NCBI GenBank assembly: GCA_000002975.1
Contig: AF165818.4
Location: 120,001 to 152,000 of the forward strand
DNA from: Guillardia theta nucleomorph
Taxonomy: Eukaryota; Protista; Cryptophyta
DNA length: 32,000 nt
Direction of reading: 5' to 3'
Below, piece after piece: positions 2,122-21,366 of the stretch (positions are counted from its first letter, which is position 1; each line of letters begins with the position of its first letter). Position numbers and translations under genes: made by a program. A model generated the notes under the pieces. That model worked only from the letters and a program-made list of their open reading frames with translations, was not told the DNA's origin and did no database searches.

Positions 2122-4032
2122 ATGATAAATATTTTTTTGCACTTATTAGTGAGTTTTTTATTAAGATTTCTTAATAAAATTAATAAAAATGAATTAATAA
2201 AAAAAAATAATTTTATTAGGACTAAAATATTCCACGGTTATATTTTTGGATATCTATCTTCGATGCCTTATAGAATAATTCCATTGATTGAATTTATTAA
2301 AAAATTCTTAAAAAAGAATAAATTTTTCAAGCACATCAATTGCTTAAAAATTGAGATGATAATACAATCGTTATTAGATTTTATACCCATAAATACATTT
2401 GAAATTTCAAAGATTAACAGTTCATATAATGGTAAAATGATAGTACATAAAGGGATTTTGTTTGATACTAGTTTAATTTTACTAAGAAAATCTCAAAAAA
2501 ATTTTAATTATGAAAAATTTAATTTATTTAATAAGATTAAGTTTAATGAAACAGAAATTAAAAATAATTATATAAAAAATTATTATTACAAAGAAGGTAA
2601 AGTTTTATTAATCCATGAGAATAATATTGCAAATGATAAAACTTTTAAAAATATAATAAAGGTTTTTTTCAAAGGGGAAGGAGTTAATTCCTGCAAAGAG
2701 GGTGATACAATTGAATTTATAGGAATACACTTATATCAATATGATATGTACAGAGAAAAAATTAATATAATAAAAGATGTTTTAAATATAATTTTGCTAC
2801 GAATTTTTAAAGAAAAAAGAATTTTAAAACAAATTATGTACAAGAAAAATCTTAAACATCAAAATTTTATAGAAAATTTATTTGATCAGAGTTTTAAACT
2901 TGACTTAAAAACAAGAAAAAAAAAATTTGAACAAATTTTAGATATAGCATTTAAGAAAAATTTTAAAGAGAAATTTGCAGAATTTATATTAATATTTGGA
3001 TCAGTTTATTATAAGAATTTCAATAAAAAAAGTATATCAATTATTATAAATAGAAATTTTAACCACATGAACTTTGATTTACAACAAAATATTATTTTTT
3101 TTCATGATAATTTCATCAATTTATACACAGATAAAAAAAATTTTAATGCAGATAGAATAACAAGTTTATTACAAGTTTCAGAAAAAAAAAAATTTAATGT
3201 AACTTTAAAAAATCATCTCAGTTCGTTCTTAATGTGCATTAGATTTAAGTCCATAAATTTCAGTAATTTAGAACAATTTATTGATAAAATTATTAATTTA
3301 AAATTATTCGAATTCAGCTCGATTAATTCGAATTTCAAAATAAATTTTCCGAATAATATTTTAATTTTCATTAGATCCAAACCAATTGAGTCTATTACTA
3401 ATACAAAAAATTCGACTACAATAGAAGAAAAGTTCAAAAAAAAATTTTTTGACAAGATAAATTTTATATTATTTTCTATTGATTTTGAAAAATTACATCT
3501 AAATGAATCTACGTTGTTAAAAAAATATGAAATGAACGAAAACTCTCAAAAGAAACTAAAATATTTGAACAAAAAATTTTTTTTTAATTTTCACATAGTT
3601 GACTTCAAGTTTTATGTAAATTTCAACAAAAATTTTTTTTTATCTAGATTAGATGCAAATACAGAAAAGTTGATAGTAAAGATTTACAAATCAACACAAT
3701 TGTTTTTAAAAAATGAATATAGAATTAATTTCATAGAAAAAATTCATTTATATTCAACTATAATTTCAAATTTGTTTTACAAACGTAAACATTCTTTTTT
3801 TGATTGTCTATTAGCAATGCTACTCGTATTTAAATTCAACATTTTCTTAAAAATTAAATACAATAGCATTTTTTTGAAAAAGTTGTTACACATGTTATTA
3901 AATTACTCTAAAAACATAGTATATGAACATAACATTTTTAGTAACAATAAAGTAAATGGTATTTTAACCACAGTTTCGGGTAATACTAATTTTATTAGAT
4001 TAATAGAAAATGAATTTCTACAATGTAAATAA
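2122..4032 (+). CDS. Highly divergent MCM-family protein (MCM9-like)
   Basis: OB-fold segments GKMIVHKGILFDTS and IKVFFKGEGVNSCKEGDTIEFIGI (cf. MCM9 VILEDDLVDSCKSGD...GI). C-terminal FKFYVNF...RLDANTEKLIVKIYK...RINFIEKI...LFYKRKHSFFDCLLAM resembles MCM helices. Zn-finger cysteines and Walker motifs are absent. Confidence 0.55.
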   Translation: MINIFLHLLVSFLLRFLNKINKNELIKKNNFIRTKIFHGYIFGYLSSMPYRIIPLIEFIKKFLKKNKFFKHINCLKIEMIIQSLLDFIPINTFEISKINSSYNGKMIVHKGILFDTSLILLRKSQKNFNYEKFNLFNKIKFNETEIKNNYIKNYYYKEGKVLLIHENNIANDKTFKNIIKVFFKGEGVNSCKEGDTIEFIGIHLYQYDMYREKINIIKDVLNIILLRIFKEKRILKQIMYKKNLKHQNFIENLFDQSFKLDLKTRKKKFEQILDIAFKKNFKEKFAEFILIFGSVYYKNFNKKSISIIINRNFNHMNFDLQQNIIFFHDNFINLYTDKKNFNADRITSLLQVSEKKKFNVTLKNHLSSFLMCIRFKSINFSNLEQFIDKIINLKLFEFSSINSNFKINFPNNILIFIRSKPIESITNTKNSTTIEEKFKKKFFDKINFILFSIDFEKLHLNESTLLKKYEMNENSQKKLKYLNKKFFFNFHIVDFKFYVNFNKNFFLSRLDANTEKLIVKIYKSTQLFLKNEYRINFIEKIHLYSTIISNLFYKRKHSFFDCLLAMLLVFKFNIFLKIKYNSIFLKKLLHMLLNYSKNIVYEHNIFSNNKVNGILTTVSGNTNFIRLIENEFLQCK

Positions 4033-4744
4033 ATTTAATAATAAGAAAAGAAATAACAAATTATTTTCAAAAAAGAATATTATTTATGACTTATTTTTTA
4101 TAATTCCTCTAATTTCTAGTAATATTGATTTTTTTTTTCATAAATATAAAAAAATTTACCACTTTTCTTATCTTAATTTAAAATTTTTCATTTCATACTT
4201 AAAGAATTGTTCTTATAGAAACATTAAAGTTCATTTAAATTTATCAATCAGTAATAATATTAAAAAAAAACATATTATCACTCTTTTCTGTTATAAAATT
4301 TCAAAAATTTTCAATTATTTGGATTTAATTAATGTTATTACAAAAAATTTTAGGTATATTTTGTTTAAAAATTTTTCGAACCATATCATTTATTCTTATA
4401 AGATGATATTCAATAAATTATTAATTCGTATTAGCACTTTTAACTATAATTTTTTTTATTCAAAATTTCATTTTTCAGCAAAATATTTAATAGTTTATTC
4501 CGATATGAGTAGTTATGAAATCCTAAGAAAAATTTTATTAAATTCTTCAAAAAAATTCATACTTATTTCCAAATTTAACTCAAGAAAAAGAAACATTTCC
4601 AATCTCAAAAGTTTTAATTCTTTTAAAGAAAAAATTATGGTAATTGATAAAATAATTCTGATAAAAATATTCAATAAAATTGATTTCCGTGAGATTAGTA
4701 ATATAATTTTGTTTAATAAAGGTGAAAAAAGTTTTTTTATATAA
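4010..4744 (+). CDS. Hypothetical protein, possibly an eroded DEAD-box helicase (DBP9/DDX56-like C-terminal RecA domain)
   Basis: 244-aa ORF. YLIVYSD...LRKIL...RNISNLKSFN...IMVID...KIDFREISNIILFN follows the spacing of helicase motifs IV-V and ends where motif VI would start. Overlaps the upstream ORF by 23 nt. Confidence 0.35.
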   Translation: MNFYNVNKFNNKKRNNKLFSKKNIIYDLFFIIPLISSNIDFFFHKYKKIYHFSYLNLKFFISYLKNCSYRNIKVHLNLSISNNIKKKHIITLFCYKISKIFNYLDLINVITKNFRYILFKNFSNHIIYSYKMIFNKLLIRISTFNYNFFYSKFHFSAKYLIVYSDMSSYEILRKILLNSSKKFILISKFNSRKRNISNLKSFNSFKEKIMVIDKIILIKIFNKIDFREISNIILFNKGEKSFFI

Positions 4745-5283
4745 ATTTTTTGTATAGCATATTTTATCTAAACATTGATTTTATAAATTTTAAATTTAAT
4801 ATCACATACAAAGTGAAGTAAAATCAACTTTTATTTTGAAAATCTTAACTTAGTAATTTTTATCAAGGTTTATTAAAATTTATTATATTATTAAAAATTT
4901 AAATTTATTTAATTTTCATGATCTTCATTTATATGAGATATAAAAATAATATAAATTTTCCTTTTTGTATTCAAGATTAGAATGTTTCATTTTAATTAGG
5001 AAAAAGTACATGAATATAAACAAATTATTTTAATATTTTAATCAAAATATTAATAACGAAAAGTATTAAGTTTTACAAAAAAATCATGTTTTCGTTTTCA
5101 TGAATAAAAACATATAAATATAATAAGAAATTTAATTATATTTTTAAAAATTTTTTGATTATATTAAAAATCTCACAATTATTTATTTTTCAAATTTGAT
5201 AGAATTTTTTTGTTTTACCATCAAAAATTTAATATAAAAATATATCAAACTTAATTATTGTATGGAAAATTTGCAATTTTTTT

Positions 5284-6624
5284 TTAGAAATAAATATTTT
5301 TTATCGAAGATTGACTAAATTTCAATCTACACAACGGGCATTTTCTATCACGTGATTTTATGAGACTGTTAATAAAAATGGTTGAAAAAGTATGTCCACA
5401 ATTAATCAGAATTACTTCTTTTGCATAATTTTTCAAAACTGGACAGTTAATTCTTGATCTAAGTTCATTTATAATCATGGTTTTATTATCAATTGATTTA
5501 CATAATAGGGTTTTATTAATTTTTTTTATTTTATTTGAAATATAAAACAATTTCGAATTTATAATTTTTAAATCGTAAATGAACCCTTTCTCCTGTAGAA
5601 GATTTTTATTTTTATAAAAATTACTTAAGCAATATCTATAGTAATTGCAAATTTGACGAAAAATCTCAAATTTAATTAAAAAATAAGTATGTAAAATGAA
5701 TTCTCTATTGAAAATTATTTCTTTAAAATTTTTGATAATATTACTCGAAATTTTTTTTGAATTAAAATAATATATCAATTGTAATAGGGTATTATTAAAA
5801 AAAATATTAAATTTAATCTTGAAATAAATATTCATATTTCTGTGATTATTTTTTTTAGGATAAATTAAATGTTTATTCAAATCAATTATTCTCCTCAATA
5901 TAAAAACAAATTTTGGTATATTTAAATTTTCTTTCAATGATAAAAATTTTTTAGATTTCAAATGATAAAAATTTTCTTTTTGTAAGCCATTTTTAAAAAA
6001 ACATCTCAATAAAATTGTTTTAGATTTTATCAATTCAAATAAAAGTTTACCACTTGATTTGTATTTAGTATGCAAAAATATTTTGTTATTATCTTGCCAT
6101 ATTTTTTGAATTATTTTTTTTTGGGAAAAATTTATTTGAAATAATTGACTTATAAAAATAAAAAAATGTTTTAATGAATGTAAATCTCTAGTTTTAGATA
6201 TTTTTTTTTTCCCTAAATTCAAATTTTTTTTAATTTTCATATTGATATTTTGTGTATTTTTTTTGTAACCAAAATTTATTGCGTCCGAATAACTAAAAAA
6301 ATTTAAATTAAAAGATCTAAAAACATGATTTCTGAAATAATTATAGTTTTCATTTTTTGCTAAAGACATTAAATTTTTAGTTTTGAATAATTTGTTGGTA
6401 TTTTCTGAATAGATAAGATTAAAATAATTTTTTGCATAAAATAATTTAAAAAAATATTTTGATAAAGGTAAATCAATTATTTCTTTAAAAATTAAAATAT
6501 CTTTAATATAATTATCTATAATATTTTTCAGTTTAGATATTAAAAATCCTAAAAATTTGTTTTTTGCAAAATATATATTAATCTTATCAATACACTTGAA
6601 TAAAAAGTAATTAGTGTTGATCAT
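5284..6624 (-). CDS. BRE1-like E3 ubiquitin ligase with a degenerate C-terminal RING
   Basis: The extreme C-terminus INCPVLKNYAKEVILINCGHTFSTIFINSLIKSRDRKCPLCRLKFSQSSIKNIYF matches the BRE1/RNF20 RING pattern (R.RKCP.C...F.......IY.). Confidence 0.65.
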   Translation of the reverse strand: MINTNYFLFKCIDKINIYFAKNKFLGFLISKLKNIIDNYIKDILIFKEIIDLPLSKYFFKLFYAKNYFNLIYSENTNKLFKTKNLMSLAKNENYNYFRNHVFRSFNLNFFSYSDAINFGYKKNTQNINMKIKKNLNLGKKKISKTRDLHSLKHFFIFISQLFQINFSQKKIIQKIWQDNNKIFLHTKYKSSGKLLFELIKSKTILLRCFFKNGLQKENFYHLKSKKFLSLKENLNIPKFVFILRRIIDLNKHLIYPKKNNHRNMNIYFKIKFNIFFNNTLLQLIYYFNSKKISSNIIKNFKEIIFNREFILHTYFLIKFEIFRQICNYYRYCLSNFYKNKNLLQEKGFIYDLKIINSKLFYISNKIKKINKTLLCKSIDNKTMIINELRSRINCPVLKNYAKEVILINCGHTFSTIFINSLIKSRDRKCPLCRLKFSQSSIKNIYF

Positions 6625-6675
6625 TAATAATTAAAAGGATTAATTAAAATTTTTTCTACGTCTATTTACAACTAT

Positions 6676-6939
6676 ATGAAATCAGCAATAAAAAAAAAAT
6701 GGTCAAAAGTTAAAAATAAAGAAAAGTCAAATAATCAAATTTATATAGAGAAAAGTCTTTACCAAAAAATTATCGATGAATTAAATAAAGAAAAATTTGT
6801 TAGTTTTACTTCTTTGTCAAGTAAATATCGTATAAAAATTTCATTAATTAAAAAGATAATCAATCATCTATCAGTTAGAAAGAATTTATATACTACTAAA
6901 CTTTTTAATAACTTCATTGTAACAAACAAAGATTTATGA
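6676..6939 (+). CDS. rps25: 40S ribosomal protein S25
   Basis: KKKWSKVKNKEKSNN motif, 87 aa, basic, followed by a winged-helix segment (SLSSKYRIKISL). Confidence 0.9.
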   Translation: MKSAIKKKWSKVKNKEKSNNQIYIEKSLYQKIIDELNKEKFVSFTSLSSKYRIKISLIKKIINHLSVRKNLYTTKLFNNFIVTNKDL

Positions 6940-7028
6940 TCAAAGTTTATTTAACATAAAATTAGTATTTTAAATTTTTAAATTAAATAGTTAAAATATA
7001 ATTTATAGTTTCTAATAATAATACCTTA

Positions 7029-8447
7029 ATGAAATGGATTACTATTTTATACAGTTTTCGAAGTTCAAATCATATAAATCTATATTTTTTACTAAAACTA
7101 TTAAATTCAATTTTTTTAAATTATGAAATTATAGATTTTTTGAATGATTCAAAATGGTATGATAATCTTTATAAAGTAACCGATAAGAAAGTGTTTGTAA
7201 TTCTATCTACAGATTTTAAATTAATTAAAAAAACTTTTAAAAGGTTTATTAACGATAATATTTTGTTTATTTTTATGGAACATCAAAATTTGAATGGATT
7301 AAACTCATTATTTAAAAACAACTCGAAATTCAAATTTATAAACTTATTTAAGGTATATGAAGTACTAAATGACAAATTGACTAATTTCTTGAAATATAAA
7401 TACTTTATTGTTAAGGACTCATATTCTTCCAAATTTCACTTGACAACGAGAAACACTTGTTTACTTGAATCATATTTATGGTATAAAAGTATTTATTTGA
7501 TTGAAAAATTATCTTCTAGAAAAATAAAAAAAGAGATCTATGATTTAGAACTAAAATATTTAGAAAAAACCATTAAAAAATTTTTATATAAACTAGATTC
7601 GGTCCGTATCATTAAACAATTTCCTATATTTTTTTTAAGACACACTTCAATCTTAAGTTCTATATATTACACTCCTTTTATTTTTATCAGTTCAAAATTG
7701 TGGAAAAACGATTATATATTTAATTTAATAAATTTCATTAAGTTTGTGCTCAAAGATGTGCCAAAATTTAATAATAGTTGGCGTAAGCAAACTAAAAAAA
7801 CAAAAAAAAAAATTTTAAATTCTTTAAAAAAAATTTTTAATTTCCTTGGTTTAGAATTATTTCAAACAAAATTGATATTTAAAAAATTTAAAGGTAAATC
7901 ATTAAAATGGTTTTCTAATTTTGATTTACTAATTCTTTCAGATAGTCTATTTTTTAGAAAATTTGATCAGAAACCAGACCATATATTGAATTTTTTTAAC
8001 TATAATAATCTTCTAGAATCATCTGGATTTATTAATAAACAATTATTAAAACAAAAAAATGAAGTAAAAAAGATTATTAATATTTGCTTAGATTTAATAG
8101 CTAAGAAAACTTATTTGGCTTTCGAGAAAAAATTATTGATTATTATTAAAAGTAATAGGATTTGTTTTAATTTTTATTCACAATTATATAGAATTTTTAA
8201 TTTGTGTTTTAAAATCGAACACAAATTGAACTCATCAATTATAATTTTGGTTAAAAATGAAAATTTCAGTGTTATTTTAACATCTCTTGTGAATTTTAAA
8301 AATATAGCCGATTTGAAAGAGTATAATGAAAATTCTGAATTATTTAATTCTAAAATACAATTCTTTATTATAAAAGAAATACTTCTAATTAAATCTAAAA
8401 AAAATTGTGAAGAAAAGATACTTCAAAAAATAGGTTTGTTTATATAA
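7029..8447 (+). CDS. Divergent CDC45-like DNA replication initiation factor
   Basis: YLW...KIKKEIY...LE then FFLRHTSILSSIYYTPF...SKLWKND resembles CDC45 LL.HWSL.DS...S.Y....KLW. Downstream KKKILNSLKKIFNFLGL...F also fits. Confidence 0.6.
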   Translation: MKWITILYSFRSSNHINLYFLLKLLNSIFLNYEIIDFLNDSKWYDNLYKVTDKKVFVILSTDFKLIKKTFKRFINDNILFIFMEHQNLNGLNSLFKNNSKFKFINLFKVYEVLNDKLTNFLKYKYFIVKDSYSSKFHLTTRNTCLLESYLWYKSIYLIEKLSSRKIKKEIYDLELKYLEKTIKKFLYKLDSVRIIKQFPIFFLRHTSILSSIYYTPFIFISSKLWKNDYIFNLINFIKFVLKDVPKFNNSWRKQTKKTKKKILNSLKKIFNFLGLELFQTKLIFKKFKGKSLKWFSNFDLLILSDSLFFRKFDQKPDHILNFFNYNNLLESSGFINKQLLKQKNEVKKIINICLDLIAKKTYLAFEKKLLIIIKSNRICFNFYSQLYRIFNLCFKIEHKLNSSIIILVKNENFSVILTSLVNFKNIADLKEYNENSELFNSKIQFFIIKEILLIKSKKNCEEKILQKIGLFI

Positions 8448-8486
8448 AATTTGAATGTTGCACACACTAAATATATATTAATTAAA

Positions 8487-9173
8487 ATGTTTTTTTGTTC
8501 ATATTTTAATCTGATTAATTGTAATCTTTTTAGATATTATCTTGTCAAAAATACTTGTTTAAAAACAAATTACTCTAATAATAAGAAAAAATCCAAAGTT
8601 AATAATTTAACATTTTTAAAATCTAACGAAGATAATCAATTAGTCAAAGAAAACACAATAAACATTGATGAAGAAAGAGATAAAATGTTTGATACTATTC
8701 TCCAAGAATTGAGTGCAATCCAGCAGAATGCTCCCAGGAGAGTTGCAATTTTAGGGACAAGACATTTTTCCTATCTTCACCAACAAATAGTAGAACTTTT
8801 GACTTATGCAAATATACTAGTAGGAAACCATGTATTTACTAGTGGAGGTGCAGTAAGTGGGACTAATGCTGCTGTAATAAAAGGTGCTCTAAGAGCAGAA
8901 AAACCAGAATTATTAACTGTTGTTTTACCTCAAAGTTTAAGCAGACAACCTCCTGATGTAAGAGAACTTCTTGAAAAGGTAAGAAATGTTGTTGAGATGA
9001 GGGAAAATGACGATTTGCCTCTTGATGTAGCAAGTAGACTATGTAATTCAAATATTCTAAGCAGGTGCGATCATCTGATATCTTTTGCGTTTCATGATAG
9101 CGTTGTTGTTTTGGAAGCAGCTCGTGAAGCAAAAGCACTTAACAAATTAGTCACATTATTATATTTAGATTAA
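8487..9173 (+). CDS. Plastid-targeted cyanobacterial-type DprA/Smf-like Rossmann-fold protein (228 aa from ATG 8487)
   Basis: QELSAIQQ..RRVAILGTRH...TSGG..GTNAAVIKGA...LLTVVLPQSL...LCN..ILSRC..LI.FAFHDS...KLVTLLYLD matches a conserved cyanobacterial family. The N-terminal extension starts MFF. First in-frame ATG is 8487 (the ORF track uses TTG 8451). Confidence 0.8.
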   Translation: MFFCSYFNLINCNLFRYYLVKNTCLKTNYSNNKKKSKVNNLTFLKSNEDNQLVKENTINIDEERDKMFDTILQELSAIQQNAPRRVAILGTRHFSYLHQQIVELLTYANILVGNHVFTSGGAVSGTNAAVIKGALRAEKPELLTVVLPQSLSRQPPDVRELLEKVRNVVEMRENDDLPLDVASRLCNSNILSRCDHLISFAFHDSVVVLEAAREAKALNKLVTLLYLD

Positions 9174-9209
9174 CACAATATTATTTAATTTAATTCATTA
9201 GAAAATAAC

Positions 9210-9722
9210 ATGAACCACAGGAATCATTATGAGTATTTAAGTTTATTTGAAAAAATGATGACTTATGATCAATTATTGAAAAGATTATTCAACGAAAAAT
9301 TATCCACTTCACGTTCTTGTTCTAAACTTATAATTCCTATTCCTAAAGTCTTTAGAGAGGGATCTAAAAAAACAGTATATAAAAATTTTCTCGATACAAC
9401 TGAAAAATTAAATCGAGACAAAGATCATTTGATTAGTTTTATTTGTAATGAACTCAGAACTTATGCTTCTATCCAAGAGGGAGGAGGGCTTGCTATCAAA
9501 GGAAGATTTAATGAAAAAGATATTCAAAAAATTATGAGGATTTACATACCTGATTATGTTTTATGCAAAAGTTGTAATTCATGGAAAACTGATTTAAGAA
9601 AAGATATTATAACTAGATTATATTTTATGGACTGTAAAACTTGTGGTGCATCAAGGTCTGTAGCAAGCATCAAAAAAAACAGTTTTGAAATAATTGACAA
9701 AAGAAAAAATAAAAATCTTTAA
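9210..9722 (+). CDS. EIF2S2: Translation initiation factor eIF2 beta subunit
   Basis: YDQLLKRLF, REGSKKT, ELRT..SI, IKGRF, YVLCKSC...CKTCGASRSV Zn ribbon. Confidence 0.93.
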   Translation: MNHRNHYEYLSLFEKMMTYDQLLKRLFNEKLSTSRSCSKLIIPIPKVFREGSKKTVYKNFLDTTEKLNRDKDHLISFICNELRTYASIQEGGGLAIKGRFNEKDIQKIMRIYIPDYVLCKSCNSWKTDLRKDIITRLYFMDCKTCGASRSVASIKKNSFEIIDKRKNKNL

Positions 9723-18803: not shown

Positions 18804-18817
18804 ACTTGTATTAGTAT

Positions 18818-18897
18818 TGAAATGGATGGGATTCGAACCCATGCCTTTTCAGACTGGAGCCTAAATCCAGCGCCTTAGACCACTCGGCCACCATTTC
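18818..18897 (-). tRNA. trnL: tRNA-Leu(TAG)
   Basis: Minus strand reads GAAATGG TGGCCGAGTGGTCTAAGGCG CTGGA TTTAGGC TCCAG TCTGAAAAGGC ATGGG TTCGAAT CCCAT CCATTTC A, with a long variable arm. Confidence 0.96.
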
Positions 18898-19279
18898 AAT
18901 TAATTATTCCTAAAACTCTTAACATTATTTCAATTTGAGAAATTAACGATTGTTTTGTCCATAGTTCTGTTAACAAACCAGTTGTAATAAAAAACATAGC
19001 AATTCTACCATTAATAATCTCTGAATATTTTGAAAAACCAAAAATTTTATTTTCTAAGATTTCTTTTTCTAATCTTTCATTTTTCCACTTTTCAGCTAGA
19101 ATTTTTAGCTTTTTTTCTCGATTTGAGATTTCTTCTTTACTTAATACTATTTTACCTGGAATATTATTATCATCAGAAATAAAATCTGTTATCGTAGAAT
19201 ATTGTATAGTTTTAAGATTTTTAACTCCATAAATATTTCCTTTAATGCCGTTAAAATTGTGCAACACAATATTAATCAT
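18896..19279 (-). CDS. hlip: High-light-inducible / one-helix protein (LHC superfamily), plastid-targeted
   Basis: FGFSKYSEIINGRIAMF...LLTELWTKQSLISQI contains the chlorophyll-binding ExxNGRxAM motif. Confidence 0.9.
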   Translation of the reverse strand: MINIVLHNFNGIKGNIYGVKNLKTIQYSTITDFISDDNNIPGKIVLSKEEISNREKKLKILAEKWKNERLEKEILENKIFGFSKYSEIINGRIAMFFITTGLLTELWTKQSLISQIEIMLRVLGIIN

Positions 19280-19421
19280 TTTGGATACTTAATATCGCGC
19301 ACTACTTTAACTTACAATATCATTTATGATAATATATTAATGATAAGAATAAAACGTGAGTTATTTAAGACAGTTGTTTTCAATACATTTTATAATTAAC
19401 CAAATACTGTTAATACTCAAC

Positions 19422-19904
19422 ATGTACAACGAACCAAGGACTTTTATTCCTAATCATATCCTGGTATCAATGGGTCTGGTTAGTACTTTTATGGTGATTA
19501 TCTGCCTAGGCTACACTTATAAATTATTGCAAGATCTCAGTACTGATACAGTCAACCCTGTAGAAGTGTGTGACAAAGTAAATCAACTCAAAGTTCCTGA
19601 ATATCTGGCCCATCTTTTTTTATCCATTGCATTTGTGATAAGAGGTTGGTGGATTGTTGGCTTCTTAAATTTTCCATTCATATTTTACAATTTTGCACAG
19701 TGGTACGAAGGGAAGCATCAGCTTGATTCTGCACAAATTTTCAATGTTCTGTCTCGTGAGCTTAGGGTTATAAAGGCGAAATCTGCTTTTTTTATCATAA
19801 TCGTGATTTACACCATATGGGAATGGATGATATGGGTTCCACCTGATTATGTATCTGCAGGAGAAGGATATCATGTTGTAAAACAGATCCAAGTCTCACA
19901 CTAA
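19422..19904 (+). CDS. Cornichon/Erv14-family membrane protein (160 aa from ATG 19422)
   Basis: LQDLSTDTVNPVEVCDKVN..KVPEY..H...G.W....LN.P...YN.......H.LD...IF..L......K is the cornichon signature, with three hydrophobic segments. Confidence 0.8.
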   Translation: MYNEPRTFIPNHILVSMGLVSTFMVIICLGYTYKLLQDLSTDTVNPVEVCDKVNQLKVPEYLAHLFLSIAFVIRGWWIVGFLNFPFIFYNFAQWYEGKHQLDSAQIFNVLSRELRVIKAKSAFFIIIVIYTIWEWMIWVPPDYVSAGEGYHVVKQIQVSH

Positions 19905-19997
19905 CCAAGAATAAAAAAAGAATTAACTCTAAAATAACTTTCAACTTAATAAAACACTTCAGATCAAATCAAAATGTATCCTATTATGTATAATTAC

Positions 19998-20049
19998 AAC
20001 TATGATGTTCTTAGCTCACATTGATTAATGATTAAATCATATAAACTGA
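19998..20049 (+). ncRNA. Putative minimal box C/D snoRNA (snR71/SNORD29-like guide)
   Basis: Box C ATGATGT 20002-20008, guide CTTAGCTCACA, D' TTGA 20021-20024, C' ATGATTA 20028-20034, D CTGA 20046-20049. The guide pairs with the conserved LSU GUGAGCUGGG, and the D'+5 rule lands on the A. Confidence 0.7.
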
Positions 20050-20121
20050 GCTTTGTTAGTATAGCGGTTAGTATGCCTGCCTGTCACGCAGGAGTCCGGG
20101 GTTCGATTCCCCGACAAAGCG
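20050..20121 (+). tRNA. trnD: tRNA-Asp(GTC)
   Basis: GCTTTGT TA GTATAGCGGTTAGTAT G CCTGC CTGTCAC GCAGG AGTC CGGGG TTCGATT CCCCG ACAAAGC G. Confidence 0.96.
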
Positions 20122-20136
20122 TCCTAAAAATAATAT

Positions 20137-21366
20137 TCAAAATTTCAATATTCCGCCAATACCACCAAATCCTTTTACGAATTGAGCACCTTCTGGAGTT
20201 CTATCTGTTATAATATATATTTGTGTTTCACATTTATTTTTATTTTCAATTACCCAATCAATCACGTTACATTTGGCTGAAAATACAAGCTTTGGGTTTT
20301 CATCTAAACATTCAGTTTTATCACACTCATTTATTTTTTTAAATTTAACTATTTCTAAATTAGTAAACGAATCGATGTATACCATTCTTTCTATTTCCAG
20401 ATTTTCCCATAAAATTATTTTTGATAAGAATCCGTTTGTTAAAGAATTACATGTTTCTTCACATCCATAAACATATTTTCCCGTATCTTTTTCGATTTCA
20501 TCAAAAAAAGATTCAATAATTTTTTTTTCTTTTATACATTTTAGTTGATCTAATACAGAAGAAGAATTTTCTATGGCCTTATTAAATCCTATTTCACCTC
20601 CATAGGAAATATCAATGATGGATAAAATTTTTTCGCGCAACTTTTCATTAAAAAGTTCTGATGATATAAGTTCATTTTTAAGGTCGGCTGGTCCGGCAAT
20701 TACTAAACCTTCAATAAAATTTTTGTTAAAATCGCTTAGATAATATTGATCTGCAAGCTCACATATTTTGCGAATAAAATTTGTTCTTTTCTCAATTCTA
20801 ATTCTACTGAATCTTAATGCAGATTGACCTCCTCTTCCGTGTTTTTTGGGTAAATTTACATTTAATTTGTATAAAATTTCTTTATTATTACCAGCTAATA
20901 TTCCGAACAGTGCCCCTTTACCATCAAGTATAATGAAAGCTATTTTTTGATCTACCTGAATCATTTCAAGCAAGATGTTCGTATGAAATTTACTATCACA
21001 AATGTAAAATGAAGAATTCAATGGCTTTAAGGGTTCTATTTCTATCAATATTTTTTTTTCTTTGTTATTTTCATCTGTAAAAGTCCCACAATATATTATT
21101 AATCCATTATTTGGAGTTTTCGTATAATATTTTAACTTTTGTTGAACTGAAGATATCGCAGACAAAACAGAAGATCGATTAATTCTTGATTTTATGTTGG
21201 AAGCAGTTGCTAATTCATCTGACAACATTTTCGAAACCTTACTGATATGTTCATTTGAAGGTATTACTAATGAAATCATACTAGTACCGTTACCTTTTAT
21301 TGTTGAAAGATATTGATAAGTTTTTTTAATCTTCCACAGTTCGGTTTCATCTGGATACAATTCCAT
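20137..21366 (-). CDS. erf1: Eukaryotic peptide chain release factor 1
   Basis: GNGTSMISL, TASNIKS, YICDSKFH, PKKHGRGGQSA, EGAQFVKGFGGIGGIL. Confidence 0.97.
   Translation of the reverse strand: MELYPDETELWKIKKTYQYLSTIKGNGTSMISLVIPSNEHISKVSKMLSDELATASNIKSRINRSSVLSAISSVQQKLKYYTKTPNNGLIIYCGTFTDENNKEKKILIEIEPLKPLNSSFYICDSKFHTNILLEMIQVDQKIAFIILDGKGALFGILAGNNKEILYKLNVNLPKKHGRGGQSALRFSRIRIEKRTNFIRKICELADQYYLSDFNKNFIEGLVIAGPADLKNELISSELFNEKLREKILSIIDISYGGEIGFNKAIENSSSVLDQLKCIKEKKIIESFFDEIEKDTGKYVYGCEETCNSLTNGFLSKIILWENLEIERMVYIDSFTNLEIVKFKKINECDKTECLDENPKLVFSAKCNVIDWVIENKNKCETQIYIITDRTPEGAQFVKGFGGIGGILKF

What the first reader, a model, noticed from the sequence alone, without database searches (positions are those of the whole stretch)
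19998..20121. snoRNA-tRNA fusion: a ~52-nt box C/D snoRNA whose D box directly abuts nucleotide 1 of tRNA-Asp
Seen: ordered C (ATGATGT), D' (TTGA), C' (ATGATTA) and D (CTGA, 20046-20049) boxes, with the tRNA starting at 20050. The D' guide CUUAGCUCAC forms 10 bp (2 G-U) with the conserved LSU peptidyl-transferase-region sequence GUGAGCUGGG. The fifth nucleotide upstream of D' pairs with the A that is 2'-O-methylated in yeast (Am2946, snR71; vertebrate SNORD29 site). Known: plant dicistrons place the tRNA first and RNase Z releases the snoRNA. Inference: here the order is reversed, so the snoRNA is effectively the pre-tRNA 5' leader and RNase P would create its 3' end. It may be co-transcribed from the upstream cornichon gene. 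This would be an unusual snoRNA biogenesis route produced by genome compaction.
Basis: partly seen in the sequence, partly recalled or inferred. Interest (0 to 1): 0.8.

Follow-up and report, generated by a model that had tools for sequence, protein, structure and literature searches.

The report
Known snoRNA abutting the tRNA-Asp gene
A small, already published guide RNA for ribosomal RNA methylation in the leftover nucleus (nucleomorph) of the alga Guillardia theta ends exactly where the tRNA-Asp gene begins. This head-to-tail pair is kept in every cryptophyte nucleomorph examined, so the enzyme that trims the tRNA probably also cuts the guide RNA free.

Summary
The window is Guillardia theta nucleomorph chromosome 1. 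tRNA-Asp(GUC) lies at 20050-20121.

The snoRNA itself is not new. It is GtNM-R11 (Asman, Curtis and Archibald 2019, PMC6461891), an abundant SNORD29-type guide for LSU-A3250. That paper lists it as 67 nt (window 19996-20062), which runs 13 nt into tRNA-Asp. The paper never mentions the tRNA.

What is new here:
- The same snoRNA sits directly 5' of tRNA-Asp in all 12 cryptophyte nucleomorph lineages I could fetch, including Chroomonas mesostigmatica.
- The gap between box D and the tRNA is only 0-9 nt.
- The gene upstream of the snoRNA differs between lineages.
- Changes in the guide all still allow pairing with the target, some through G-U wobble pairs.
- Sense-strand RNA reads cover the junction without a break.

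Best reading (about 0.55): one snoRNA-tRNA precursor, in which the RNase P cut at tRNA +1 makes the snoRNA 3' end. This is inferred, not shown. The published 67-nt annotation argues for the rival, in which the RNAs overlap but mature separately.

Verdict: a new variant of the known tRNA-snoRNA dicistrons, of moderate interest.

The parts
19996..20049 (+). Box C/D snoRNA GtNM-R11 (SNORD29 type), from the published 5' end to the last base of box D
   Evidence: Suppl. Table 5 of PMC6461891 matches the window sequence. It is the only full copy in the genome. Rfam SNORD29 E 0.013.
20002..20008 (+). Box C, AUGAUGU
   Evidence: GATG is invariant in 12 lineages.
20009..20020 (+). D' guide. U20016 pairs with LSU-A3250 (GUGAGC)
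   Evidence: The AGCUCA core is conserved, and the changes are compatible with pairing through wobble.
20021..20024 (+). Box D', UUGA
   Evidence: [ACU]UGA in all lineages.
20028..20034 (+). Box C', AUGAUUA
   Evidence: a [AU]UGA motif lies between D' and D in all lineages.
20035..20045 (+). Region upstream of box D. It is not conserved and is probably not a working guide
   Evidence: It differs even from the 97%-related L030.
20046..20049 (+). Box D, CUGA. Its last base is position -1 of tRNA-Asp
20050..20121 (+). tRNA-Asp(GUC), with no encoded CCA
   Evidence: ARAGORN. Rfam 64.9 bits.
20050..20062 (+). First 13 nt of tRNA-Asp, included in the published 67-nt GtNM-R11 sequence
   Evidence: One search compared.
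19422..19904 (+). Cornichon gene upstream on the same strand. Possible source of read-through precursors in G. theta
   Evidence: Pfam PF03311, E 1e-24. Sense coverage is continuous into the snoRNA.
19350..20029 (+). About 680 nt repeated with 100% identity at two chromosome 3 sites. The repeat ends inside the snoRNA
20137..21366 (-). eRF1, convergent, 15 nt from the tRNA 3' end. Used as the synteny anchor for the comparison

Best explanation
GtNM-R11 is a minimal SNORD29-type box C/D snoRNA. Its D' guide directs 2'-O-methylation of nucleomorph LSU-A3250. The snoRNA and the single tRNA-Asp gene form one head-to-tail unit that is conserved across cryptophyte nucleomorphs.

Proposed steps:
1. 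Transcription starts upstream. In G. theta at least part of it is read-through from cornichon. It runs through the snoRNA into the tRNA, because there is no room or signal to stop between them.
2. The snoRNP proteins protect the stretch from box C to box D.
3. The 5' side is trimmed to a 5'-monophosphate end.
4. The RNase P cut at tRNA +1 releases the snoRNA with a 3' tail of 0-9 nt, so the tRNA's whole 5' leader is the snoRNA's tail. The RNase P is not encoded in the nucleomorph and must be imported.
5. The tRNA is then finished at its 3' end.

Shown: the anatomy, the conservation, the published expression, and sense RNA covering the junction. Inferred: that the RNase P cut makes the mature 3' end, and that A3250 is methylated.
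For: - Anatomy and target.
- Published abundance: TPM 2946-9665.
- Published target: LSU-A3250 = human A4493/SNORD29 = Arabidopsis A2936/U29.
- Conservation: 12 lineages whose eRF1 proteins are 52-79% identical to each other all carry box C-guide-D'-C'-D directly 5' of tRNA-Asp. Spacers are 0, 0, 0, 0, 1, 1, 1, 4, 4, 5, 6 and 9 nt.
- The spacers fall within or close to the 3-13 nt that follow box D in the other published G. theta snoRNAs, so little or no further trimming would be needed.
- The upstream neighbour varies. Rearrangements never separated the snoRNA from the tRNA.
- No conserved terminal stem needs nucleotides beyond box D.
- Sense-strand depth is 105 and 74 in the two bins that flank 20049/20050, and 188-212 over the tRNA 3' half. 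No pile-up of read ends was reported at the junction. An 818-nt RNA-type contig spans it.
- R11 is the most sensitive of all the small RNAs to Terminator exonuclease in the light sample: ratio 0.011, against 1.3-1.9 for the snRNAs in that sample. This points to a processed 5' end and so to a longer precursor.
Against: - The only published ends put the 3' end at 20062, 13 nt inside the tRNA. That pipeline removed reads mapping to tRNAs, capped reads at 76 nt and drew ends by eye.
- The raw-read run showed no concentration of ends at 20049/20050, but it is a 3'-biased 60-nt library that is poor for small RNAs.
- No RNase P RNA or PRORP was found in the nucleomorph genome. The controls for these searches did not respond. 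The paper also says RNase P RNA is missing.
- A Pol III start for the tRNA inside the snoRNA cannot be excluded.
- Nucleomorph tRNA genes are often wedged against their neighbours with almost no spacer, and nucleomorph gene order changes slowly. Adjacency alone could therefore reflect compaction only.
Confidence: 0.55

Rival explanations
1. The units overlap but mature separately. The stable snoRNA keeps about 13 nt of tRNA sequence, as in the published 67-nt form, and its 3' end is made by 3' exonuclease trimming or by a cut inside the tRNA. Functional tRNA-Asp comes from its own Pol III transcripts, which start a few nucleotides upstream inside the snoRNA. The tight spacing reflects genome compaction and slow change of gene order only.
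For: The published sequence is 67 nt and ends at window 20062. Other tRNAs in this genome also touch or overlap their neighbours. No pile-up of read ends was seen at 20049/50. Only 1 of the 10 tRNA genes examined has a snoRNA upstream, so this is not a general processing scheme.
Against: A snoRNA precursor must still read into the tRNA, because no terminator fits in 0-9 nt. A folded tRNA in that precursor is a natural RNase P substrate. The published end may be an artefact of the 76-nt read cap and the tRNA read filter. The spacer never exceeds 9 nt in 12 lineages. No terminal stem uses tRNA nucleotides.
Confidence: 0.3
2. A Pol III dicistron. TFIIIC bound to the tRNA's internal A and B boxes places the start about 55-65 nt upstream, so Pol III makes the snoRNA and the tRNA as one transcript. 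This mirrors the plant tRNA-snoRNA genes. RNase P still separates the two RNAs.
For: In L036 and L037 only about 50 nt separate box C from a divergent tRNA-Ala, which leaves little room for a Pol II promoter. T-runs follow the tRNA in most lineages (trailers).
Against: In G. theta, sense coverage runs continuously from cornichon and R11 is sensitive to Terminator exonuclease, so it is not 5'-triphosphate. G. theta has no T4 run after the tRNA. From general knowledge, Pol III tRNA leaders are normally under 20 nt. No conserved upstream motif was seen.
Confidence: 0.1
3. A chance arrangement of short motifs in AT-rich DNA, and not a functional snoRNA.
For: The boxes are short. The Rfam scores are below the gathering thresholds.
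Against: The RNA is abundant in published data. Boxes and guide are conserved in 12 diverged lineages while the flanks are not. The expected chance count is 0.00.
Confidence: 0.02

Closest known systems
GtNM-R11 / SNORD29 (human), U29 (Arabidopsis), snR71 (yeast)
   Same: This is the same RNA as published GtNM-R11. It has the same D' guide core (UAGCUCAC + NUGA) and the same target adenosine in the conserved GUGAGCUGGG of LSU rRNA.
   Different: It is much shorter (48 nt from box C to box D) and has no terminal stem. The link to tRNA-Asp and its conservation in other cryptophytes were not reported. The yeast equivalence rests on my own count of the 25S sequence from memory.
Plant dicistronic tRNA-snoRNA genes (Kruszka et al. 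2003, cited in PMC3491384 and PMC13578239)
   Same: A tRNA and a C/D snoRNA lie on one strand almost without a spacer, and a tRNA end-processing endonuclease would define one snoRNA end.
   Different: The order is reversed here (snoRNA first), so the enzyme would be RNase P making a 3' end, not RNase Z making a 5' end. The tRNA's internal Pol III promoter cannot simply drive an upstream snoRNA.
Nanoarchaeum equitans tRNA-Val-sRNA8 and Thermococcus kodakarensis tRNA-Arg-sR44 (PMC3491384, PMC4247193)
   Same: A minimal genome, archaeal-sized C/D RNAs without paired ends, and a proposed co-transcript with a tRNA.
   Different: For N. equitans the tRNA lies upstream, and both papers propose release by RNase Z. 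N. equitans lacks RNase P altogether.
MALAT1/MEN-beta-mascRNA 3'-end formation by RNase P (Wilusz et al. 2008; from my own knowledge)
   Same: The 3' end of an upstream functional RNA is created by the RNase P cut at the 5' end of a downstream tRNA-shaped element.
   Different: There the downstream element is a tRNA mimic and the upstream RNA is a long Pol II transcript. Here the downstream element is a real, essential tRNA and the upstream RNA is a snoRNA.
Mitochondrial tRNA punctuation (Ojala et al. 1981; from my own knowledge)
   Same: tRNAs butt against neighbouring genes and act as processing signals in a compacted genome. In this window the hlip ORF's stop codon overlaps tRNA-Leu.
   Different: This is a genome of nuclear descent with eukaryotic polymerases, and the released neighbour is a snoRNA.

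Membership tests
Box C/D methylation-guide snoRNA | Box C (RUGAUGA) near the 5' end and box D (CUGA) near the 3' end | tested here: met
   AUGAUGU at 20002-08 and CUGA at 20046-49. Conserved in 12 lineages.
Box C/D methylation-guide snoRNA | Internal D' and C' boxes | tested here: met
   UUGA at 20021-24 and AUGAUUA at 20028-34.
Box C/D methylation-guide snoRNA | A guide duplex with rRNA ending next to D/D', with the target paired to the fifth nucleotide upstream | tested here: met
   10 bp (2 G-U) with the own LSU sequence. 8-10 bp in 12 lineages, with the +5 register kept. Eight base pairs is short.
Box C/D methylation-guide snoRNA | A terminal stem of 4-5 bp closing the C/D kink-turn | tested here: not met
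   No in-register stem in any of 11 lineages. This is as in archaeal sRNAs (PMC3491384). It is not required for the class in minimal systems.
Box C/D methylation-guide snoRNA | Stable expression as a small RNA | tested here: met
   Published small-RNA-seq, TPM 2946-9665. My own read data do not resolve the small RNA.
Box C/D methylation-guide snoRNA | 2'-O-methylation at the predicted site and binding by fibrillarin, Nop56, Nop58 and Snu13 | not testable with these tools
   The paper reports that the nucleomorph encodes all four proteins. There are no methylation data.
SNORD29 (Rfam RF00070) | A score above the family's gathering threshold | tested here: not met
   23.8 bits against 48, E 0.013. 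The shared guide and target suggest homology, but convergence cannot be excluded.
Dicistronic tRNA/snoRNA unit | Same strand, with a spacer of a few nucleotides | tested here: met
   0 nt in G. theta and 0-9 nt in 12 lineages.
Dicistronic tRNA/snoRNA unit | A joint precursor transcript | tested here: inconclusive
   Sense depth is 105 and 74 on the two sides of the junction, with no end pile-up reported, and an 818-nt contig spans it. No single read was inspected, and the contig carries no strand information.
Dicistronic tRNA/snoRNA unit | tRNA first, Pol III from the tRNA promoter, release by RNase Z (plant and archaeal type) | tested here: not met
   The order is snoRNA then tRNA, so this is a variant and not a member of that type.
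RNase P-defined 3' end | The mature 3' end of the upstream RNA coincides with tRNA position -1 | not testable with these tools
   The published annotation ends at +13.

The most novel reading that the evidence does not exclude
The stable snoRNA really does keep the first ~13 nt of tRNA-Asp, as published. Each precursor would then yield either a snoRNA or a tRNA, never both. That would couple the supply of the only nucleomorph tRNA-Asp to production of a ribosome-modifying guide. In species with no spacer, the guide can also pair in cis with its own box D/tRNA junction (UGAGCU, the same six bases as the rRNA target). This would place position -1 at the methylation site and could modulate the RNase P cut.
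Probability: 0.12. Interest if true: 0.75.

Novelty: new variant of a known kind. Interest (0 to 1): 0.55.

Why it matters
The snoRNA is known, but its physical union with tRNA-Asp is not described in the paper that reported it. My full-text searches also found no snoRNA-then-tRNA unit of this kind.

If RNase P makes the snoRNA's 3' end, this would mirror the plant and archaeal tRNA-snoRNA genes that use RNase Z. It would also show that tRNA-processing enzymes serve as general RNA-release tools in a shrunken eukaryotic nucleus, much as in mitochondria.

The finding corrects the published GtNM-R11 record, whose sequence overlaps tRNA-Asp by 13 nt but is marked as having no overlap. It adds R11 homologues in 11 further nucleomorph lineages. 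It also gives a simple substrate for finding the still unknown nucleomorph RNase P.

Tried and rejected
- **Whole-genome scan of tRNA upstream regions:** Only 10 of 32 tRNA genes were examined, and only tRNA-Asp has C/D boxes upstream.
- **Scan of viral contigs for the arrangement:** no hits.
- **RNase P RNA (RF00009) and PRORP (PF16953) in the nucleomorph:** no hits, but the control genomes did not respond either, so this is weak evidence.
- **Terminal stem using tRNA nucleotides:** the Rfam alignment suggested C20000-G20050 and A19998-U20052. No such stem is conserved, so I dropped it.
- **Conserved promoter motif upstream of box C:** none is visible.
- **MFE fold of the 136-nt precursor:** not significant (z = -1.2), and it does not recover the cloverleaf.
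- **Run X15, which I guessed might be a small-RNA library:** it gave a single contig at 19792-19988 and nothing over the snoRNA, so it is uninformative.
- **DNA could not be fetched for two eRF1 loci**.
- **Named Hemiselmis andersenii and Cryptomonas paramecium records** could not be picked out, so I cannot say they were covered.
- I redid it by reference.
- **Two searches failed on syntax and were corrected**.

Full report
**Identity of the window.** The window's genome has 551,264 bases in three contigs, and the window is contig 1, 120001-152000. That size, the 16-30% G+C content and an exact sequence match to a published small RNA identify it as the Guillardia theta nucleomorph, chromosome 1.

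**The observation.**
- ARAGORN and Rfam place tRNA-Asp(GUC) at 20050-20121 on the + strand.
- Upstream, the sequence reads box C AUGAUGU (20002-08), guide UCUUAGCUCACA, D' UUGA (20021-24), C' AUGAUUA (20028-34) and D CUGA (20046-49). The next base is tRNA nucleotide 1.
- The guide pairs over 10 bp (2 G-U) with GUGAGCUGGG. That sequence is present in all six rDNA copies of this genome.
- The fifth nucleotide upstream of D' pairs with the A of GUGAGC.
- The box C-guide-D' string is unique in the window, with 0.00 expected by chance.
- Rfam gives sub-threshold C/D matches, including SNORD29 at E 0.013.

**The snoRNA is already known.**
- Asman, Curtis and Archibald 2019 (PMC6461891) found 11 nucleomorph C/D snoRNAs by small-RNA sequencing.
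- Their GtNM-R11 is a 'potential homolog of SNORD29'. Its D' guide targets LSU-A3250, equivalent to human A4493/SNORD29 and Arabidopsis A2936/U29.
- Its sequence in their Supplementary Table 5 is the window sequence from 19996 (the stored PDF text has a few reading errors).
- It is the fifth most abundant of their 21 small RNAs, at TPM 2946-9665.
- Its stated length of 67 nt puts the 3' end at window 20062, 13 nt inside tRNA-Asp. The table nevertheless says 'overlap: no', and the paper never mentions tRNA-Asp.
- Their pipeline discarded reads mapping to tRNAs, used reads of at most 76 nt and drew ends by eye. That 3' end is therefore uncertain.
- They report two 34-nt pseudogene copies on chromosome 3. 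I find these are the right-hand edge of a roughly 680-nt block that is 100% identical in three copies. It holds the whole cornichon gene, the spacer and the first 34 nt of the snoRNA, and it breaks at 20029/20030.

**New comparative evidence.**
- A pattern scan of metagenome contigs for guide + D' + D + tRNA-Asp D-arm found one 106-kb AT-rich contig with the same arrangement and a 6-nt spacer.
- I then used the convergent eRF1 gene as a synteny anchor and fetched the DNA around its relatives.
- Every locus whose DNA could be fetched has tRNA-Asp just past the eRF1 stop codon on the opposite strand. Immediately 5' of the tRNA, each has box C, an AGCUCA-type guide, D', a C'-like UGA and box D.
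- One of these loci is Chroomonas mesostigmatica CCMP1168 nucleomorph, CP003681.1.
- Counting G. theta, there are 12 distinct lineages. Their eRF1 proteins are 52-79% identical to each other, apart from one 97% relative of G. theta.
- Box D-to-tRNA spacers are 0 nt (four lineages), 1 nt (three), 4 nt (two), 5, 6 and 9 nt. Box C to box D spans 45-57 nt.
- Guide substitutions all keep pairing with the invariant target, some through wobble: C or U opposite G8, U for C opposite G1, and G for A opposite U2. The +5 register never moves.
- The segment before box D is not conserved, even in the 97% relative. Only the D' guide is under selection.
- The gene upstream of the snoRNA differs between lineages:
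  - cornichon on the same strand in G. theta;
  - a divergent CCT subunit in several lineages;
  - an unknown same-strand ORF in two;
  - a divergent tRNA-Ala only about 50 nt away in two.
- The conserved link is therefore to tRNA-Asp and not to cornichon.
- Among the 10 G. theta tRNA genes I could read, only tRNA-Asp has C/D boxes upstream.

**RNA evidence.**
- One 2026 raw-read RNA run (60-nt reads, first mate in sense, 3'-biased) gives sense-strand depth that peaks over the cornichon 3' end. That peak is the sum of three identical loci.
- Depth then continues at 689 (20001-27), 105 (20028-54), 74 (20055-81) and 188-212 (20082-20135). It decays to below 20 beyond 20244.
- Past 20029 the reads are specific to chromosome 1.
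- No pile-up of read starts or ends was reported at 20049/20050, so reads must cross the junction.
- Antisense depth from eRF1 read-through is 20-44.
- An older run has contig depths of 9465, 3620 and 578, which do not fit the 3:2:1 ratio expected of DNA. It holds an 818-nt contig from 20000 through the tRNA into eRF1.
- This supports a sense RNA that contains both genes. It says nothing about mature ends.
- The published TPM table shows R11 dropping to 0.32 (dark) and 0.011 (light) of its untreated level after Terminator exonuclease. U1, U2, U4 and U6 stay at 0.9-1.9. This is one replicate of each treatment. It suggests that R11 has a 5'-monophosphate and so a processed 5' end, contrary to the paper's 'capped' reading.

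**Mechanism.**
- With 0-9 nt between box D and the tRNA, and no T-run inside the tRNA, any transcript that makes the snoRNA must run into the tRNA.
- A folded tRNA in that transcript is a substrate for RNase P. Its cut would leave the snoRNA with a tail of 0-9 nt, within or close to the 3-13 nt seen after box D in the other published G. theta snoRNAs.
- No lineage has a conserved terminal stem that would need more 3' sequence.
- I therefore favour a snoRNA-tRNA precursor separated by RNase P, at about 0.55.
- The enzyme is unknown. Neither RNase P RNA nor PRORP was detected in the nucleomorph (weak controls), and the paper also lists RNase P RNA as missing.
- The main rival, at about 0.3, is that the abundant species really ends at +13 and that the tRNA comes from separate Pol III transcripts starting inside the snoRNA.
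- A Pol III dicistron starting upstream of box C is a minor variant, at about 0.1.

**Comparison with what is known.**
- Plant tRNA-snoRNA genes and the archaeal cases in N. equitans and T. kodakarensis are read as tRNA-then-sRNA units released by RNase Z.
- Full-text searches for snoRNA, tRNA, dicistronic, RNase P and for 'snoRNA-tRNA' found no unit in the reverse order.
- From my own knowledge, the nearest mechanistic parallel is RNase P forming the MALAT1 3' end at mascRNA.
There the follow-up did not favour co-transcription. I did not test it.

**Verdict.**
- The snoRNA is already known.
- Its conserved head-to-tail union with tRNA-Asp is new.
- RNase P as the maker of the 3' end is plausible but unproven.

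Noticed in passing
window 19350-20029; L008 (- strand) and L009: The whole cornichon gene, its 92-nt 3' spacer and the first 34 nt of the snoRNA occur three times with 100% identity: once on chromosome 1 and twice on chromosome 3. The right break is at 20029/20030, inside the snoRNA. The two chromosome 3 copies share 61 further nt past the break. RNA reads and contigs continue into the chromosome 3 sequence, so the truncated copies are transcribed as part of longer RNAs.
   Followed up: partly
PMC6461891 Suppl. Table 6 (GtNM-R5 to R13): After Terminator exonuclease, most nucleomorph C/D snoRNAs fall to 0.01-0.45 of their untreated TPM, while the snRNAs stay at 0.9-1.9. This suggests 5'-monophosphate (processed) ends rather than the caps the paper infers. 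The data are one replicate each and the values are relative TPM.
   Followed up: partly
window 20013-20018 and 20047-20052: Box D plus the tRNA start reads UGAGCU, the same six bases as the rRNA target. The guide AGCUCA can therefore pair in cis with its own 3' junction, and the MFE fold uses this pairing. It exists only in the lineages with no spacer, so it is probably a coincidence.
   Followed up: partly
window 18817-18898 (-) and ORF 18896-19279 (-): The stop codon of the small hlip-like ORF overlaps the first bases of tRNA-Leu on the same strand. This is a second case in the window where the RNase P cut would define the 3' end of the upstream gene's RNA.
   Followed up: no
window 20122-20160: No run of four or more T follows tRNA-Asp in G. 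theta; the longest is TTT at about +29. Ten of the other eleven lineages have a T4-T8 run within about 25 nt of the tRNA end (L039 has only TTT), though such runs are common in AT-rich DNA.
   Followed up: partly
L036 2988-3062 and L037 3015-3087: In two metagenomic or Logan nucleomorph lineages a tRNA-Ala(AGC) lies divergently only about 50 nt from box C of the snoRNA. The CCT gene sits on the other side of GCN5, so the local gene order is rearranged.
   Followed up: no
window 19913-19986: A few reads (3-7 each) of the raw RNA run join opposite strands within the cornichon 3' spacer. This is probably a library artefact at an AT-rich stretch.
   Followed up: no
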